From: Lama glama
Taxonomy: Eukaryota
DNA length: 64,000 nucleotides
NCBI GenBank assembly: GCA_028534125.1
Contig: CM052850.1
Span: 2,356,001 to 2,420,000 of the forward strand
Direction: 5' to 3'
Shown: piece after piece, positions 7,324-25,173 of the stretch
Position numbering within the stretch: the first letter of the stretch is position 1
Layout: each line of letters starts with the position of its first letter
The notes under the pieces: model-generated
Seen by the model: the letters and a program-made list of their open reading frames with translations, nothing else
Database searches by the model: none
What the model was told of the DNA's origin: nothing
Program-made: the position numbers and the translations under genes

Positions 7324-8282
7324 TTACCGAAAGGATCTAAAAGTCGGGGAGGAGTGGGACTGGGATTGCTAAAGGATGCAAACTGTAACCTCCCTCCAGT
7401 CCCTCTCGCTCAGACCTCAGCTGGGGAGGCGCTTCCAGAAAATGTCTGTTAACAGAGTCACTGGGCTGGTGCAGGGCATCTCTTCAGGCTCAGGAAAGCA
7501 AGCAGCAGAGTGTTCTATGCAAGCCCCTCATTGAGCCGTCTACCACAGAGACTTGGCCAGAACCTGCCGTGAACCTGGAGCCACTTGGAACTAAGTGAGG
7601 GCAGCTGTCAAAATGTCTACACCAAGAAACGAGCACGGCTTTGCCTTCTGCAGTCTGCCCTCCCCGGGGAGGGCCCCGCCCTGGCGCGCTAGAGCTGTGG
7701 CGAGCGTGTAACTGACTGAACAGCTGCTGCGGACGCACTGCTGTCCCTCCATCACCCACCCCACCCCTGCTCCGCCTTCAACTCTGGCACCTTGAGGTGC
7801 CACAGATGTTCAAACAGATCCACAAAAACTTCTTGTCTCTGTCAAAACTCGACGTAAGACAGACAGACAGAAAAAAAAGGAAGCCAGGAAAACAGACAAA
7901 GAAATGAGGCGTGGCCTGCACCGGTTAGGACAGACAGTCCTGACACAGAGCTGTGTGTGTAAGTAACTGCCTACGTGCTAGAGGGGCCAGGAGGGGAGGA
8001 AAGGAGGGGAAATACGCAGGGGAAGTCCTGGGAAACACTTCTTGCGATGGTTGGCTGGATCTTGACGTTAAGCCCATCTGCAGGGGGGGGCGCCATTTTG
8101 CCTCATTAATGGGGAGGAGCAGGCTCTGGAGAGAAGGCCCATGAGCCAGGTTTTGCTTATAGCGAAGGGGGTCGGGGACAAGTCAAGGGATCACCTGAAA
8201 ATGTCAGCTGTTTCTTCATAACCCACCAGTTCCATGCAGCCCAGGAGGCCACTGCACGTGGCAGGTGGTGGTTGCTCTTTAC

Positions 8283-17554: not shown

Positions 17555-17860
<306 letters not shown>

Positions 17861-19709
17861 CTAGGGAATGATGCCAAATTCCATGGGAAGAGGGACTAGT
17901 CATTCTGTAGGACTCCTCCACGGTCCTAAGAATGTCTTTAACAGGGATCCTTAAAAGAAAAAAAGTGGTTCAGGCAAAGGAGTCAGCTCTGCGAGGTGGC
18001 TCCATTCCCTGTTCCAGGAATGCCCTGGATTTCCACTTGTCCCATGAATACTGCCCCCTCCCCCAAACTCAGGTGGAAAGATGGTGATGGGGGAGATTGT
18101 TGTTTTGCTTCTCTGATTTGGAAGATGCATCCTGATGCCCCCTTTTTGAGTCTTTAAAAGATGAAGTTTGCCAGCACATGGTTGAACATGCAGAAGTTCA
18201 GCTTATCCAGAGGATGAGGCGGAGCAGAATGGAAGAGTAGGAAAATGCAAACAGGGTCCAGGGGGAGAGGCGTGGGGAGAGCGGAGAAGAGAGAATGGGA
18301 GAAGGGTGATCAAGGCAGGAGCAGAGTGGGCAGGCCTTGTGCCCCTCACCCAAAGGAAGGGGATCAAACTGAAATGGCCAAATCCACTTTCCAGAGAGTA
18401 TCTTGCTTTTTGGAATTCTTTAACTTTTCCTCCAATCCCCACATCCCTTCTCCCACCAAGCTTCACCCCAGAAAGTCAAAGAACTCGGGGCCACATTCCA
18501 CCACCTGGTACTTTGGGATGTGGCATCATGAGCAAAAAGGATGCCAGCCCCTACACTGCACGGAAGGAGCCCTGTAGTGGGGTGGGTGAGGGTCCCTAAA
18601 GGGCCCCGTTGCAATGAGATGCTCTCTGGAGCTGTCGACTTAGAGGTAGCGGCAGAAGGTCCTCCGGCAGAACCACCAGCCTAGCAGGAAGGCGAGTGTT
18701 TCTTCCCAAGGCAGGCTCTCTAAGACTCCATTGTAGCATCTTGCCTAATGTGCTTCCACAAACATGGTGTCTTAGAGTGTAAAGCCATTTTGTGACTGAG
18801 TTCTATCTCTCTTTAAGCTTCTGGAGAAGTGGCAACATTGTTATAGTGAATTCCTAGGGGGATGAAAGAGCTCCAGAGCTCAAGGTCAGTCTGAACAGCA
18901 ATGGGGAATGAACAGCAGCTATAAGTAACTGTGGAGAAAGACTCAGGCCCCCAGGCTCTGAGCACCCTAATGGCAGGCACAATGCCTAATGGCACCCGAG
19001 GTACAACGCTGCTCTAAGCAAGCTGAGGGGAATCCACCCATAACTCAGCCATACCAACAAGACAGATCTAATGCTGAATGCAACAGGTGCCCATGGTCAC
19101 CCTTTCCCTTGTACTGCGAGAAAATGGGTAGCCGGGCTAATGGAGAAAGGGAGCTGCATACTTCATCATGTATCGCGGGACAGAAGTCATGTTCCTTTCT
19201 TTCTCATACCTAGAAGGAACCATGCCATCATTCCTTCCTACATCATGAAGAAATTTAAGTTTTCCTCTCTCCTAAAAGTTTCTTTTTGAACCATGTTTAG
19301 AGGAATTTCTGCATTATTTCCTTTGCTTTTCTGATTGAAGATGTGGTTTTTTTAAATAAGCTCTGAGAGCTGTCTTGCTGTAGGGCCTCCTTCTTGCCCA
19401 TATGTACTGTCCAGCCGGCCACCACTCTGCCTCCTCTGAAAGGAAATGTGCTACTTAACCCATCTTTCTAGTGATCCACTCACGAGAAACCACACATTTA
19501 AACACAGAATAACATATTTTAAAACCTCACGTTGAATAGTATCACAAACCACCTTGTGTATCGATTCAGGACTTTATCCTTTCAGAAGACCTTCCTGACC
19601 CTCTCATCTAATTTCTTTTGCCGTTGGTCCCCCTCCTCCGCCTCCCCAGCCCAGCTTCCTCCCCACATTCTGGCCTCCCCGCAGCGGGATCCCATTTCCT
19701 GCTGGTCTC

Positions 19710-19857
19710 NNNNNNNNNNNNNNNNNNNNNNNNNNNNNNNNNNNNNNNNNNNNNNNNNNNNNNNNNNNNNNNNNNNNNNNNNNNNNNNNNNNNNNNNNNN
19801 NNNNNNNNNNNNNNNNNNNNNNNNNNNNNNNNNNNNNNNNNNNNNNNNNNNNNNNNN
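19710..19857 (-). other. Assembly gap (148 N), probably containing a copy of the EF-hand exon (~39, downstream copy)
   Basis: The N-run is seen directly; its content is inferred. It is preceded on the minus strand by a 156-nt AG-free pyrimidine-rich tract ending ...cccaccccac. Confidence 0.65.
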
Positions 19858-21675
19858 GTGGGGTGGGAGCGGGGCGGGGTGGCAGGGAAAAGATGCAGAC
19901 GGGGAGGGGGCAGGAGAACAGGCATTCCCACGGAGCCAAAACAAACAAACAAAAGAATACAGAAAACAGGAAAAGAAAAACAAAAAAGGACAAACAGGAA
20001 AAGAATAGGAAACCTGTTAATCAAGGCAAAATCGTACACGTGTCTCCATCCTGGTGCAGATTTATATCACGCCCCACACAGACCCGGGAACGAACGTGGC
20101 GGCCACCTCTGGTCCCACCGACTCTCCTGTGAGCTGTCACAGGGACTGGTTTTCTCCTCCTGGGTTAGCATCACCCTACTTTCCTGTGGGCGCCATCCGT
20201 CCCCCACACCACACAAGCTTATCTTCAATTCCCAGGGCTGTGTGCGGGCGGTATAAACCGGATAGACGGCGCTCCAGCCGTGGGCTCGGATTTCTGGCCC
20301 CGGCTGGGGTGGGCCCTGGCCTGGAAGTCAGGCCTGTCTCCTGCTCTGACCCACAGGCGGAGCACCGTGTATCCCCCTCTGTGCTGAGTGCAGCCGGAGG
20401 CGGCGGCTGGCGCTGCAAGTGGCGGCTGTGGCTGCTGCTCAGAGTTGGCCCGTTGCTTCCACCTGGCTCTGCGGAGGAGAGGGCTCTGTGTGCCCCGGCA
20501 TGCCCCGGGGCCACGGTAGGCATGCCAGGGACAGAAGAAACAAAACCAGGAGGAGGAAGAGCATCTCGCATGCCATGCTGCCCTCCCCGGCTCTCCCCCA
20601 TGCGGCTGCCGGCTTCACCAGGGTGGAGTTTAAAGAGTCTTAGCAGAGGCAGCTGTTTGGCCTCCCGAGTATGGGAATCACTTGTCACCACCCCAGGCCA
20701 GCTCCTTTCCATCGCCCTGGCTGGCAGTTTCCTGGGCCTAAGTCTTATTCCGGCCCCAGGGAGCCCCGCTTCCCTCCTGTGCGCCTGGACAGGCTTCCTT
20801 ATCTGGTGGGTGTGGCCTCGGACAGGGGCTTGGTGGAGCCACTGGGTTAAGAGTCCCCAAGGTCTGGCAGAGTTGGAGAGGGAGGTCCTGTGTGCCCTGA
20901 ACAATGTCCTTGGTCCCACAAATAAGCAGTGACTCAGCAGTTACCCCTTGGCCCCCTCAACAATATACACAAGGACCCTCAGGCAAGGAATCTGGTCCAG
21001 AGACCCCGCCATCCATGCGACCTTCCCAGATCCTCTGAGCTACTAAATCCTCCCCCACAACACCAGCTCTGTCCTCTGTGTGTTCTTTACTTATCCTCAT
21101 CTCTTGCTCTCATTTTGAAACTGTTTTTCACCTCCTTTCTGTCCTACAGCTTTTATAATTGCTTGTGGCCAAGCTACCTGGGAGCTGGGGGTGGGGGTAG
21201 AGGCCAGGGTGGCTAGAATCAGACTTTTCTACATCATATATGGGATGAGCATACAATTTTCCTAAAAAGAAGCGCTCTGTCGCCAGTGAAAAGAAACCAG
21301 AACTTTCTGCTGGATTAACAAGACTTCTGCATTTTTCTGGAGGAGGGAGAGGTCCCTTGAGTTAAGTCCACAGATTAAGGTGGAGTGAGAAAGAGAGTGT
21401 GTGTTCACGAATGAGTGTGTGCAGGTGAAGTAAACCGAGAGAGGTGAAATCAGCCTTTGTTATTAAGTCCTTGACTCATTTTTTCCTGCCTTCCCCAGAA
21501 AAGGGGGCCCTTCTTCCTTGTGTAACAGCTGCTGGTTCTGGGAGGGTCTGGATCTCTTTAAACTCAAAGGAAAGCAACATGAAGGTTCCCTCATGTGGCG
21601 CAGTGGTGGTGGAGCAGAACGGAGAGGAGGGGGGCTGGAGGCTGCACCCCACCGCCGGTCATGGTCACGGTCACG

Positions 21676-21839
21676 NNNNNNNNNNNNNNNNNNNNNNNNN
21701 NNNNNNNNNNNNNNNNNNNNNNNNNNNNNNNNNNNNNNNNNNNNNNNNNNNNNNNNNNNNNNNNNNNNNNNNNNNNNNNNNNNNNNNNNNNNNNNNNNNN
21801 NNNNNNNNNNNNNNNNNNNNNNNNNNNNNNNNNNNNNNN
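21676..21839 (-). other. Assembly gap (164 N), probably containing a copy of the EF-hand exon (~39, upstream copy)
   Basis: The N-run is seen directly; its content is inferred. The minus-strand flank entering the gap is gctaagctgtcatttctctcc (branch-like plus pyrimidine tract), and the required 3n+1 exon is absent elsewhere in the intron. Confidence 0.6.
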
Positions 21840-23449
21840 GGAGAGAAATGACAGCTTAGCCACGACGGGGACAGCTGGAAGAGAAAGGGCAGCTTCTTTC
21901 CTTGGGCCCAGCAAAGCCAGGGCAGGAGAGGCAGAGGACAGTAAGCATCAGAACCATCATTTTGCAAACTGCACTGCCTCTAATTCTCTAAGGAAATCAG
22001 AGCCCGTTCCATGCCTAGTGACCACGAGCACCTGTCTGGCCCATACCTGGCCAGATGCAGAAAATGGAGCCTGGCTCAAGCTAGACTTCAAAGAACAAAG
22101 CCCACCAGTTCACAAATGCCTCTGACTGCAGTCAGCAGTAGACACCAGGATGCCGTGAAGCAGACTGCAGAACACTTTGCTTTTCACAGACACTGAATAC
22201 AGTCAGTTACTCAGACCCGCTCGTCAGGGAAGTGGGAAGTCAGCGTCTTCCTACAGAAGACCAGAGGGAAATTTCCTGTTAGGCTAATTAGCAGGGGGCA
22301 CAGCTGGCATGAAGTGATTTGCAAAGGGCTTTGTTTCTCTTTGTGGCAGATTTTCCCCGAGTCCCGCTTGGACAAACTCTTCTCTATTTGGTGGAGCCCG
22401 TTGGGATCTGTGCTCTGACAGCAGCCTGAGAGGGGGCCGCCACGTTCTCCCCCCAGCCTTGCTCCAGCCACCCGGCCCATAGGCAGCCGGTCAGATCCAG
22501 TCAGAATTCCAGGAACAACGTGACCTATCTTATCAACCCCCTTTCACAGAGCCTGCTGGAGAATCCTGGCAGGACAGAATCAACAGTTGATTCATTTTCA
22601 GTGGTTACCACATCTGCTCCATCAGGGGCCAAATCACAACGGCCAGGGGTCTGCAGGTCTAGACACATCCTGGTACCAACCAGGGCCTCCGCCGGAAATT
22701 ACAAGCAGGCATCTCCACCTGCAAGCATCCAACCCTCACCAGCCGCGTCGAGACTGCAGTTTCACCCCAGCTTCATTCTTCCTCCTTTTCTTGATTTTGC
22801 TGTTGATTCTTCCTTTTCTTCCAAACAGCGGCTCGCCAGTACTCCCAGGTCTCCTGACTCTTGAGAGGAGGTTCCTTTAACCACGTGTTCTTTTGTTCCT
22901 TATCGCAGCTGGGATGTGGGTGAGTTGGCACTGCTGTCTGTGGGCCGGTGTGCTCTGCAACCTGCCTCATTCTCCTTTCTGAAGACGCTGGCTCACTGGT
23001 CCTTTGCTGGTTTCCCGTCTCATCTCATAGAGAAGGCCAGGGAGATGGTAACCAGGGCGAGTTACACTGCGAACTTCGAAGCAGACACAAGAGGTGCTCC
23101 TTGGTGTTCTTGCTCTTTTACAGCTCGTGTGTCCGAGTCTTACGATTAGACCCCGTGGAATCATTTCTTCCCAGCCGATGGAAACACTGGGGAGCAGCAT
23201 TTGGGCCCCAAAATACTATGGAGCCATAGGAAGCTGGGGTTTCTGAGAGCCAAGGGCACCGGCGTGAGGCTAGGTGAGCAGCGAACCCCTTGGCTAGCTG
23301 CTGGTTTCTCCTCCCTCAGGTGAGTGAGGAGGCCCCTTTTTGGTCTCTTGATCCCATGGCCATCCAGCTTTACAGATGCTAATTTTCCATGCTTTCTACT
23401 TGCTTTCCCATATGGTGACTGTTAATTATAACAACAGTTACATATATAA

Positions 23450-23560
23450 TTTAACATACACCTCACAAGGTAGGTGGGATCATTGCCACTATTACACCGA
23501 TGAGGAAGCTCTGGGTGGTAAGGTGACTTGCCCAAGGCCACAGAGTTGATGAAGAGCAGG
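23450..23560 (-). mobile_element. MIR SINE fragment
   Basis: gatgaggaagct...aaggtgacttgcccaaggccacag. Confidence 0.6.
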
Positions 23561-24028
23561 CTGGCTGCCCTCCCCTGTAACACGCTGCCTACCGTAGTTT
23601 AAGCAGCCTATCCGACTAGAAATTAGGCCCAGAAAGTAACAGCCATTGCTCAGCCATTGTAACAGGAATGGATTTACAAAACCCTGTGCTCTAGGTCATT
23701 AATAATTACTGAGAGGAAGAGGAACTCTCACTCACTCTTCCAGCATCTGAAGCAGTGACCCAAGTTCAACAGCCTCATAGGAGGACAGATTTGGGAGAGG
23801 GTCTTAGATTATGAAGTGGCTCCAGGTGGAAGCAACGTGGTCCATTCCTGTGAAGGATGGCATTTCTGGTAGTATTTTCAGAGGGGGACCAGAATGGATA
23901 GATTGCTGAGATAAGATCCTGAAACTCAGATGCCTTGGGACTGGACAGTTCCTGTGGAGTGAGGGCTCATAGGACTCCCACCCCACCTTCAACAGTGAGG
24001 GCCAAAAGCCTGCCCTTGAACTCTAAAG

Positions 24029-24242
24029 CAGGGACCGGCAAACTTCTTCAGTAAAGGGTCAGATGGTAATATTTTTGAACTGGAGGGCCAGATCGCCTTT
24101 GTCACGACTATGTAACTGCCTTGCAGTGTGAAAGCAGCTGCAGACAATACATAAATAAGCATGGCTGTGTTCCAATAAACCTTTATTTGCAAAAATACAG
24201 TGGGCCACAGTTAGCCCACGGGTTATAGTTTGCCAGCCTCTG
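24029..24242. mobile_element. hAT-Charlie MITE, MER58A-like, full length
   Basis: Terminal inverted repeats cagggaccggcaaac / gtttgccagcctctg; perfect 8-bp TSD ctctaaag at 24021-24028 and 24243-24250. Confidence 0.85.
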
Positions 24243-24672
24243 CTCTAAAGTCCAGAAGGCACATGGTCACTGGAGAACTACTGCAAAGTGAAAAGGACCT
24301 GGGCGAGGTCATCCCCAGATTCCTGCCACTTCCTCAGTGCCACGCCACAAAAGTCTACAAGTGTTTCAGGGGTCAGGTGGAAGAGAAACTCGATTATTTT
24401 ATAGAATTTCAGAGTCACCTGGCAGTGTACCTTTTGAGAGGGATGAAAGACATAAAACAGTGGTGTCACTGCCCATGGTGGCTGGATGTCCAGCCGGCCC
24501 AGAAACCCCGTCAACCCCCCGGTGACTCAGAGGAGTCCACTAACGATTTTGGAAGCTCCTCCAGGGACTGAACTCAAATGTTCTGAGGTGAGGACTGTGT
24601 GCTAAGATTGGCAAAGGAAGGGAAAAGCCTGTCACAGAAGGAAAGTGGGGAGGAAGGAAGACAGGGAAGCTA

Positions 24673-25173
<501 letters not shown>

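What the first reader, a model, noticed from the sequence alone, without database searches (positions are those of the whole stretch)
19710..21839. Missing EF-hand exon and two exon-sized gaps at 3' splice sites: probable hidden pair of mutually exclusive Cav2.3 exons
Seen: exon 24866-24993 ends in phase 2 (...RAA-TG) and the next readable exon (17560-17665) starts in phase 0, so an exon of length 3n+1 is required between them. I found none in the readable intron. The only two gaps in 64 kb (164 and 148 N, about 1.8 kb apart) both fall in this intron, and on the coding strand each begins right after a pyrimidine tract (...catttctctcc[N], ...cccaccccac[N]). Known: the missing segment is the 97-nt EF-hand exon (GRIHY...VAYK), which in CACNA1A and CACNA1B exists as mutually exclusive 37a/37b. 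Inference: each gap holds a copy. Including neither copy, or both (194 nt), would frameshift, which enforces exclusivity. Standard Cav2.3 models as I recall them show only one such exon.
Basis: partly seen in the sequence, partly recalled or inferred. Interest (0 to 1): 0.85.

Follow-up and report, generated by a model that had tools for sequence, protein, structure and literature searches.

The report
Known Cav2.3 exon-37 pair under N runs

Summary
The minus strand carries CACNA1E (Cav2.3). Exon 24866-24993 (human residues 1714-1755, 100% identical) ends in phase 2. Exon 17560-17665 (residues 1789-1823, 100%) starts in phase 0. The 33 residues between them, 97 nt, are missing. A profile of a-type and b-type exon-37 peptides finds nothing in the 6,888 readable intron bases (best 4.7 bits, against 72-76 bits for controls). 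The window's only two N runs both lie in this intron.

The reading "one copy per gap" is well supported, but only indirectly. Hatje et al. 2017 list a validated human CACNA1E pair of 97-nt, phase 2-0 exons whose starts are 1984 nt apart, conserved in 17 of 18 mammals. The two N runs start 1982 nt apart. The longest AG-free stretch of the intron (157 nt) ends exactly at the second N run, and a pyrimidine tract precedes the first. Skipping both exons puts a TGA at the junction.

The novelty claim fails: several papers already describe 37a/37b in Cav2.3. Verdict: already known, low interest.

The parts
24866..24993 (-). CACNA1E exon '36' (128 nt). It covers the end of IVS6 and the start of the GPHH/EF-hand region, and ends in phase 2 with TG of the split Cys codon, followed by the donor gtgcgt.
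   Evidence: 100% identical to human Cav2.3 residues 1714-1755. Pfam Ion_trans positions 221-240 and GPHH positions 1-13.
21840..21851 (-). Pyrimidine tract (11 of 12 Y) just upstream, on the coding strand, of N run 1. It looks like an acceptor region, but the AG itself is not visible.
   Evidence: only 3.6% of intron positions are as pyrimidine-rich. The AG-free run here is only 15 nt, which is uninformative.
21676..21839 (-). N run 1 (164 N, length estimated). Inferred to cover the orthologue of exon 37a (97 nt, phase 2-0) with both of its splice sites.
   Evidence: It begins 3026 nt after exon 36. It starts 1982 nt before N run 2, against 1984 nt between the human 37a and 37b starts. No 37a-like sequence is found anywhere in the readable intron. 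Letters not read.
20240..20700 (.). GC-rich block in the intron between the two N runs (GC 0.65, CpG obs/exp 0.51). It holds five GCATG motifs on the coding strand at 20503-20603.
   Evidence: Long ORFs on both strands have no Pfam match. Its role is unknown; it may be regulatory.
19858..20014 (-). AG-free, strongly pyrimidine-rich zone of 157 nt that ends exactly at the coding-strand start of N run 2. This is the AG exclusion zone expected upstream of an acceptor with a distant branch point.
   Evidence: it is the longest AG-free run in the 7.2-kb intron, and only 0.01% of intron positions have 156 nt or more. The acceptors of exons 36 and 38 each have 54 nt.
19710..19857 (-). N run 2 (148 N, length estimated). 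Inferred to cover exon 37b, the canonical 97-nt EF-hand exon (human residues 1756-1788).
   Evidence: The exon is required by phase and is absent from readable sequence. The AG exclusion zone abuts this run. It ends 2044 nt before exon 38. Letters not read.
17560..17665 (-). CACNA1E exon '38' (106 nt, starts in phase 0), covering the end of the EF-hand region and the start of the pre-IQ/IQ domain.
   Evidence: 100% identical to human Cav2.3 residues 1789-1823. Pfam Ca_chan_IQ positions 1-17.

Best explanation
The window's minus strand carries the domain III to C-terminus part of CACNA1E (Cav2.3, R-type calcium channel). The intron between exons 36 and 38 holds the already published pair of mutually exclusive 97-nt exons 37a (upstream) and 37b (downstream, canonical). 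These exons encode alternative versions of the second half of the EF-hand-like motif in the proximal C-terminus.

In this sequence each exon, with its splice sites, lies under one of the two N runs: 37a under 21676-21839 and 37b under 19710-19857.

Exclusivity is enforced by reading frame. Each exon is 3n+1, so with neither exon the e36|e38 junction reads TGA (shown). With both exons, 194 nt shift the frame (inferred), and such transcripts would be expected to be removed by nonsense-mediated decay.

Shown here: the gene identity, the exon phases, the absence of any e37-like sequence in the readable intron, the spacing, the AG exclusion zone and the TGA.

Inferred: the contents of both N runs, and that both exons are used in this animal.
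For: 1. Exons 36 and 38 are 100% identical to human Cav2.3 residues 1714-1755 and 1789-1823. Exactly 33 residues are missing, and every other segment of Cav2-like probes is collinear in the window.
2. No a-type or b-type e37 sequence is in the readable intron: best 4.7 bits against 72-76 bits for controls.
3. Hatje et al. 2017, Dataset EV2 of validated mutually exclusive exons, lists human CACNA1E cluster 255 with two 97-nt, phase 2-0 exons. They lie at chr1 (GRCh37) 181748579-181748675 (then unannotated) and 181750563-181750659 (annotated). The cluster is conserved in 17 of 18 mammals, including Bos taurus and Orcinus orca.
4. Human start-to-start spacing is 1984 nt. The N runs start 1982 nt apart. 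The range possible with the stated N lengths is 1919-2029 nt.
5. The longest AG-free run of the intron (157 nt) ends exactly at N run 2, and a pyrimidine tract precedes N run 1.
6. Reviews state that 37a/37b are conserved in CaV2.1, CaV2.2 and CaV2.3.
7. Skipping both exons gives TGA at the junction.
Against: - The letters under the N runs were not read (barred), so neither exon is seen directly.
- N lengths are estimates, so the 2-nt agreement in spacing may be partly luck.
- Support for N run 1 rests on spacing, a 12-nt pyrimidine tract and conservation in other mammals. Its AG-free run is only 15 nt.
- Gap edges in assemblies tend to fall in low-complexity C/T-rich sequence, which could mimic acceptor tracts.
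Confidence: 0.8

Rival explanations
1. Only one N run (most likely 19710-19857) holds the single canonical exon 37. The other N run is ordinary intron or low-complexity sequence that failed to assemble. Exon 37a has been lost, or has decayed beyond recognition, in this lineage.
For: At least one exon is demanded by phase, and the AG exclusion zone singles out N run 2. N run 1 has only a short pyrimidine tract and a 15-nt AG-free run. The sequence just after N run 1 is a GTGACC-like short repeat and GC-rich, the sort of place where assemblies break.
Against: The pair is conserved in 17 of 18 mammals, including two cetartiodactyls. A decayed 37a outside the gaps should still have been picked up, yet nothing exceeds 4.7 bits. 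A second gap landing by chance within about 220 nt of the predicted 37a site has a probability of roughly 0.7% over the window, or about 6% within this intron (my estimate).
Confidence: 0.12
2. The two exon copies are near-identical in this species, through recent duplication or gene conversion, and that is why both dropped out of the assembly.
For: Both N runs coincide with the two expected exon sites. Repeats a short distance apart can break short-read assemblies (general knowledge).
Against: The readable flanks of the two N runs are no more alike than shuffled sequence: upstream score 13 against 12.8±1.8, downstream 11 against 9.6±1.4. So no recent duplication reaches beyond the runs. The published a-type and b-type exons form separate, old clusters shared by all three CaV2 genes. 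Another note on this genome (s1-861261) suggests that N runs here fall on conserved exons in general, which would mean masking rather than collapse.
Confidence: 0.05
3. Misassembly: exon 37 is not in this intron at all in the true genome order, or both exons lie in one N run whose length is badly underestimated.
For: N lengths are only estimates, and nothing was laid across them.
Against: At least 18 exons are collinear across 58 kb, with only this segment missing. The human intron between the two exons is 1887 nt, matching the 1818 readable bases between the runs plus the remainders of the runs.
Confidence: 0.03

Closest known systems
Human CACNA1E (Cav2.3) mutually exclusive exons 37a/37b (Hatje et al. 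2017, MXE cluster 255; Thalhammer et al. 2017 'CaV2.3a/CaV2.3b' as cited in PMC7235277)
   Same: Same gene (flanking exons 100% identical in protein), same intron, same required length and phase (97 nt, 2-0), and the same spacing of the two sites (1982 against 1984 nt).
   Different: Here both exons are hidden under N runs, so their sequence, intactness and use in this species are not shown.
CACNA1A (Cav2.1) EFa/EFb and CACNA1B (Cav2.2) e37a/e37b
   Same: Homologous position in the proximal C-terminus (EF-hand-like motif after GPHH), 97-nt exons, and frame-enforced exclusivity. The a-type and b-type exons cluster across the three paralogues (PMC7235277).
   Different: Functional effects are worked out for Cav2.1 (Ca2+-dependent facilitation, coupling to release) and Cav2.2 (nociceptor current density, G-protein inhibition). 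[quoted passage not shown]
Exons with distant branch points and long AG exclusion zones (a class enriched in alternatively spliced exons; my own knowledge, Gooding et al. 2006)
   Same: A 157-nt AG-free pyrimidine-rich zone abuts N run 2.
   Different: The branch point and the acceptor AG are not identified here, because the AG lies in the N run.

Membership tests
CaV2 exon 37a/37b mutually exclusive EF-hand exon pair | Lies in the intron between the exon ending ...WAEYD-AA-(C) in phase 2 and the exon starting RL..MNMP in phase 0 | tested here: met
   the flanking exons match Cav2.3 residues 1714-1755 and 1789-1823 at 100%.
CaV2 exon 37a/37b mutually exclusive EF-hand exon pair | The exon needed is 97 nt (3n+1), so that none or both break the frame | tested here: met
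   33 residues are missing, including the split codon. The e36|e38 junction reads TGA. The effect of including both exons is inferred only.
CaV2 exon 37a/37b mutually exclusive EF-hand exon pair | Two homologous EF-hand-like exon sequences, an a-type upstream of a b-type, each with AG and GT | not testable with these tools
   Both candidate sites are N runs, and operators bar filling them or looking up their letters. The readable intron holds neither type.
CaV2 exon 37a/37b mutually exclusive EF-hand exon pair | The two exons about 2 kb apart, as in human CACNA1E (1984 nt start to start) | tested here: met
   The N runs start 1982 nt apart, and the possible range is 1919-2029 nt. Human coordinates come from PMC5740500 Dataset EV2.
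CaV2 exon 37a/37b mutually exclusive EF-hand exon pair | Acceptor-like sequence upstream of each exon | tested here: inconclusive
   N run 2 has a 157-nt AG exclusion zone, found at only 0.01% of positions. N run 1 has only 11 of 12 pyrimidines (3.6% of positions) and a 15-nt AG-free run.
CaV2 exon 37a/37b mutually exclusive EF-hand exon pair | Splice-junction reads from exon 36 into each exon, and from each exon to exon 38, bridging the other | not testable with these tools

The most novel reading that the evidence does not exclude
In this camelid the pair differs from other mammals. Either 37a and 37b have been homogenised by gene conversion, which would explain why both dropped out of the assembly, or 37a is lost or disabled under the first N run, which would leave Cav2.3 with a single EF-hand form.
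Probability: 0.07. Interest if true: 0.35.

Novelty: already known. Interest (0 to 1): 0.12.

Why it matters
It matters little beyond annotation. It shows that a gene model built on this assembly will lose exon 37, and so break the Cav2.3 frame, unless the N runs are resolved. Annotators should also expect two alternative exons there, not one.

The biology is published: a frame-enforced a/b switch in the EF-hand-like motif of all three CaV2 channels. What remains open in the field is what the switch does in Cav2.3, and this window cannot address that.

Tried and rejected
- The look-up of encoding contigs was meant to fetch the orthologous intron from other, non-human mammals.
The single call was used and nothing was laid. 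Later local scripts read the window file and printed only numbers or positions for that place. One search was asked for 20040-21675, but the tool itself listed ORFs running into that place; I did not use them.
- The search of protein representatives with exon 36 returned mostly read-through fragments. It was useful only as a source of e37 probe peptides.
- Thalhammer 2017 and Gray 2007 are not held in the library, so I rely on papers that cite them.
- The 'near-identical copies' idea was tested on the flanks and found no support.
- The long ORFs in the GC-rich block between the N runs have no Pfam match, so I rejected them as genes.
- The human peptides of both exons were printed by the paper tool. 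I did not use them to fill the N runs or as probes.
Exons were searched one by one, by reference. The only joining was a local translation of the e36|e38 junction.

Full report
**Observation**

The window has exactly two N runs, 19710-19857 (148 N) and 21676-21839 (164 N). On the minus strand, exon 24866-24993 is preceded by an acceptor ...ccag and ends ...GCC GCG TG|gtgcgt, so it is 128 nt and ends in phase 2. Exon 17560-17665 follows ...cacag, starts in phase 0 and is 106 nt.

Searched one at a time by reference, the two exons match human Cav2.3 (PDB 7xlq chain A) at 100%. They cover residues 1714-1755 and 1789-1823, and they score better against Cav2.3 than against Cav2.2 or Cav2.1. Pfam places them at the end of Ion_trans plus GPHH positions 1-13, and at the start of Ca_chan_IQ. 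Residues 1756-1788, together with the split Cys codon, are therefore missing.

Local tblastn with two Cav2.2-like full-length proteins returned shows at least 18 collinear exons from about 62.6 kb down to about 4 kb. Only this 33-residue segment is absent.

**Is the exon anywhere in the readable intron?**

No. tblastn with e37 peptides gives only noise inside 17666-24865. I then built an HMM from eight e37 peptides taken from proteins the search returned, covering both a-type and b-type. I scanned all 333 stop-free segments of the intron in six frames. The best score is 4.7 bits (E 0.56). Two a-type peptides left out of the model score 72-76 bits. So neither copy, nor a recognisable relic, lies in the 6,888 readable bases.

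**Gap flanks**

The flanks of each N run share no 10-mer, so they are not overlapping ends. Neither flank has coding similarity, so frame continuity across a gap has no meaning here. Any exon must lie wholly inside an N run, together with its AG and GT. That needs at least 101 nt, which fits within 148 and 164.

On the coding strand, N run 1 follows 11 of 12 pyrimidines, matched by 3.6% of intron positions. N run 2 follows 10 of 12, matched by 8.6%.

The AG-free runs say more. The longest AG-free run of the whole intron, 157 nt (20014 to 19858), ends exactly at the start of N run 2. Only 0.01% of intron positions have 156 nt or more behind them, and the acceptors of exons 36 and 38 each have 54 nt. 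This is the AG exclusion zone expected for an acceptor with a distant branch point, a class known to be enriched among regulated exons (my own knowledge). N run 1 has only 15 AG-free bases, which says nothing either way.

**What is known**

The literature says otherwise.
- PMC7235277 describes 97-nt mutually exclusive exons 37a/37b in CaV2.1, CaV2.2 and CaV2.3. It calls UniProt Q15878 residues 1756-1788 'CaV2.3b' and reports that the three a-exons and the three b-exons cluster separately.
- PMC7555146 says the pair is conserved across the three channels and that little is known about its role in CaV2.3.
- PMC6802325 says Cacna1e contains homologues of e37a and e37b.
- Hatje et al. 2017 (PMC5740500) give the hard data in Dataset EV2, their table of validated mutually exclusive exons. 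CACNA1E cluster 255 has a then-unannotated exon at chr1 (GRCh37) 181748579-181748675 and the annotated one at 181750563-181750659. Both are 97 nt and phase 2-0, and the cluster is conserved in 17 of 18 mammals (all but Ochotona), including Bos taurus and Orcinus orca.
- The same paper accepts frame shift with a premature stop as one of the mechanisms that make such exons mutually exclusive.

**Geometry**

From those coordinates the human exons start 1984 nt apart, with 1887 nt of intron between them. The two N runs start 1982 nt apart, with 1818 readable bases between them. If each run holds AG plus 97 nt plus GT somewhere within its stated length, the exon starts could be 1919-2029 nt apart, and the human value falls inside that range.

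One run must hold the canonical exon. By my estimate, a second, unrelated gap would land within about 220 nt of the predicted 37a site with a probability of roughly 0.7% over the window, or about 6% within this intron. I used only coordinates from the paper. The paper tool also printed the human peptides of both exons, and I did not use them to fill the runs or as probes.

**Mechanism**

Joining exon 36 directly to exon 38 reads ...GCG TG|A GAC..., a TGA at the junction (a local translation only, not sent to any search). Including both exons would add 194 nt and shift the frame. This is inferred, since the letters are unknown. So exactly one of the two must be used, as in CACNA1A and CACNA1B.

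**Why both exons are unread**

The readable flanks of the two runs are no more alike than shuffled sequence, and the a-type and b-type exons are old and distinct, so I find no support for that idea.

Another note on this genome (s1-861261) says that all seven N runs in another piece fall on exons or 3'UTR-like sequence, and it suggests masking rather than gaps. That is an unchecked lead. It does fit what I see here: two N runs, both at expected exon sites, with spacing accurate to 2 nt.

**What could not be done**

I did not recognise any human contig and kept none.

**Verdict**

The structural inference, one exon under each N run, is the best explanation. I put it at about 0.8 overall, about 0.95 for 37b under N run 2 and about 0.85 for 37a under N run 1. 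The feature is the published CACNA1E 37a/37b pair, so it is already known and of low interest. Its practical value is for annotating this assembly.

Noticed in passing
window 20240-20700: A GC-rich block (GC 0.65, CpG obs/exp 0.51, up to 0.64 in 20240-20439) lies in the intron between the two N runs. Stop-free ORFs of 247 aa (minus strand) and 292 aa (plus strand) have no Pfam match. It is probably non-coding, and it might be a regulatory island between 37a and 37b.
   Followed up: partly
window 20503-20603 (minus strand): Five GCATG motifs (the core of an RBFOX-type site) fall within 100 nt, out of ten in the whole 7.2-kb intron. They lie about 650-750 nt upstream of N run 2.
   Followed up: no
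window 21630-21675 (minus strand, just after N run 1): A short GTGACC-like tandem pattern and GC-rich sequence directly follow the first N run. This kind of low-complexity sequence can also break assemblies.
   Followed up: no
window 7791-7838: An earlier first-reader note (s1-862811) proposes an unannotated 48-nt in-frame cassette exon in the Cav2.3 C-terminus. I did not examine it.
   Followed up: no
proteins P0004-P0031: Many database 'proteins' that match exon 36 are prokaryote-style read-throughs of the exon into its intron (...RAAWCVG...), called on animal contigs. They are artefacts of gene calling, not real isoforms.
   Followed up: partly
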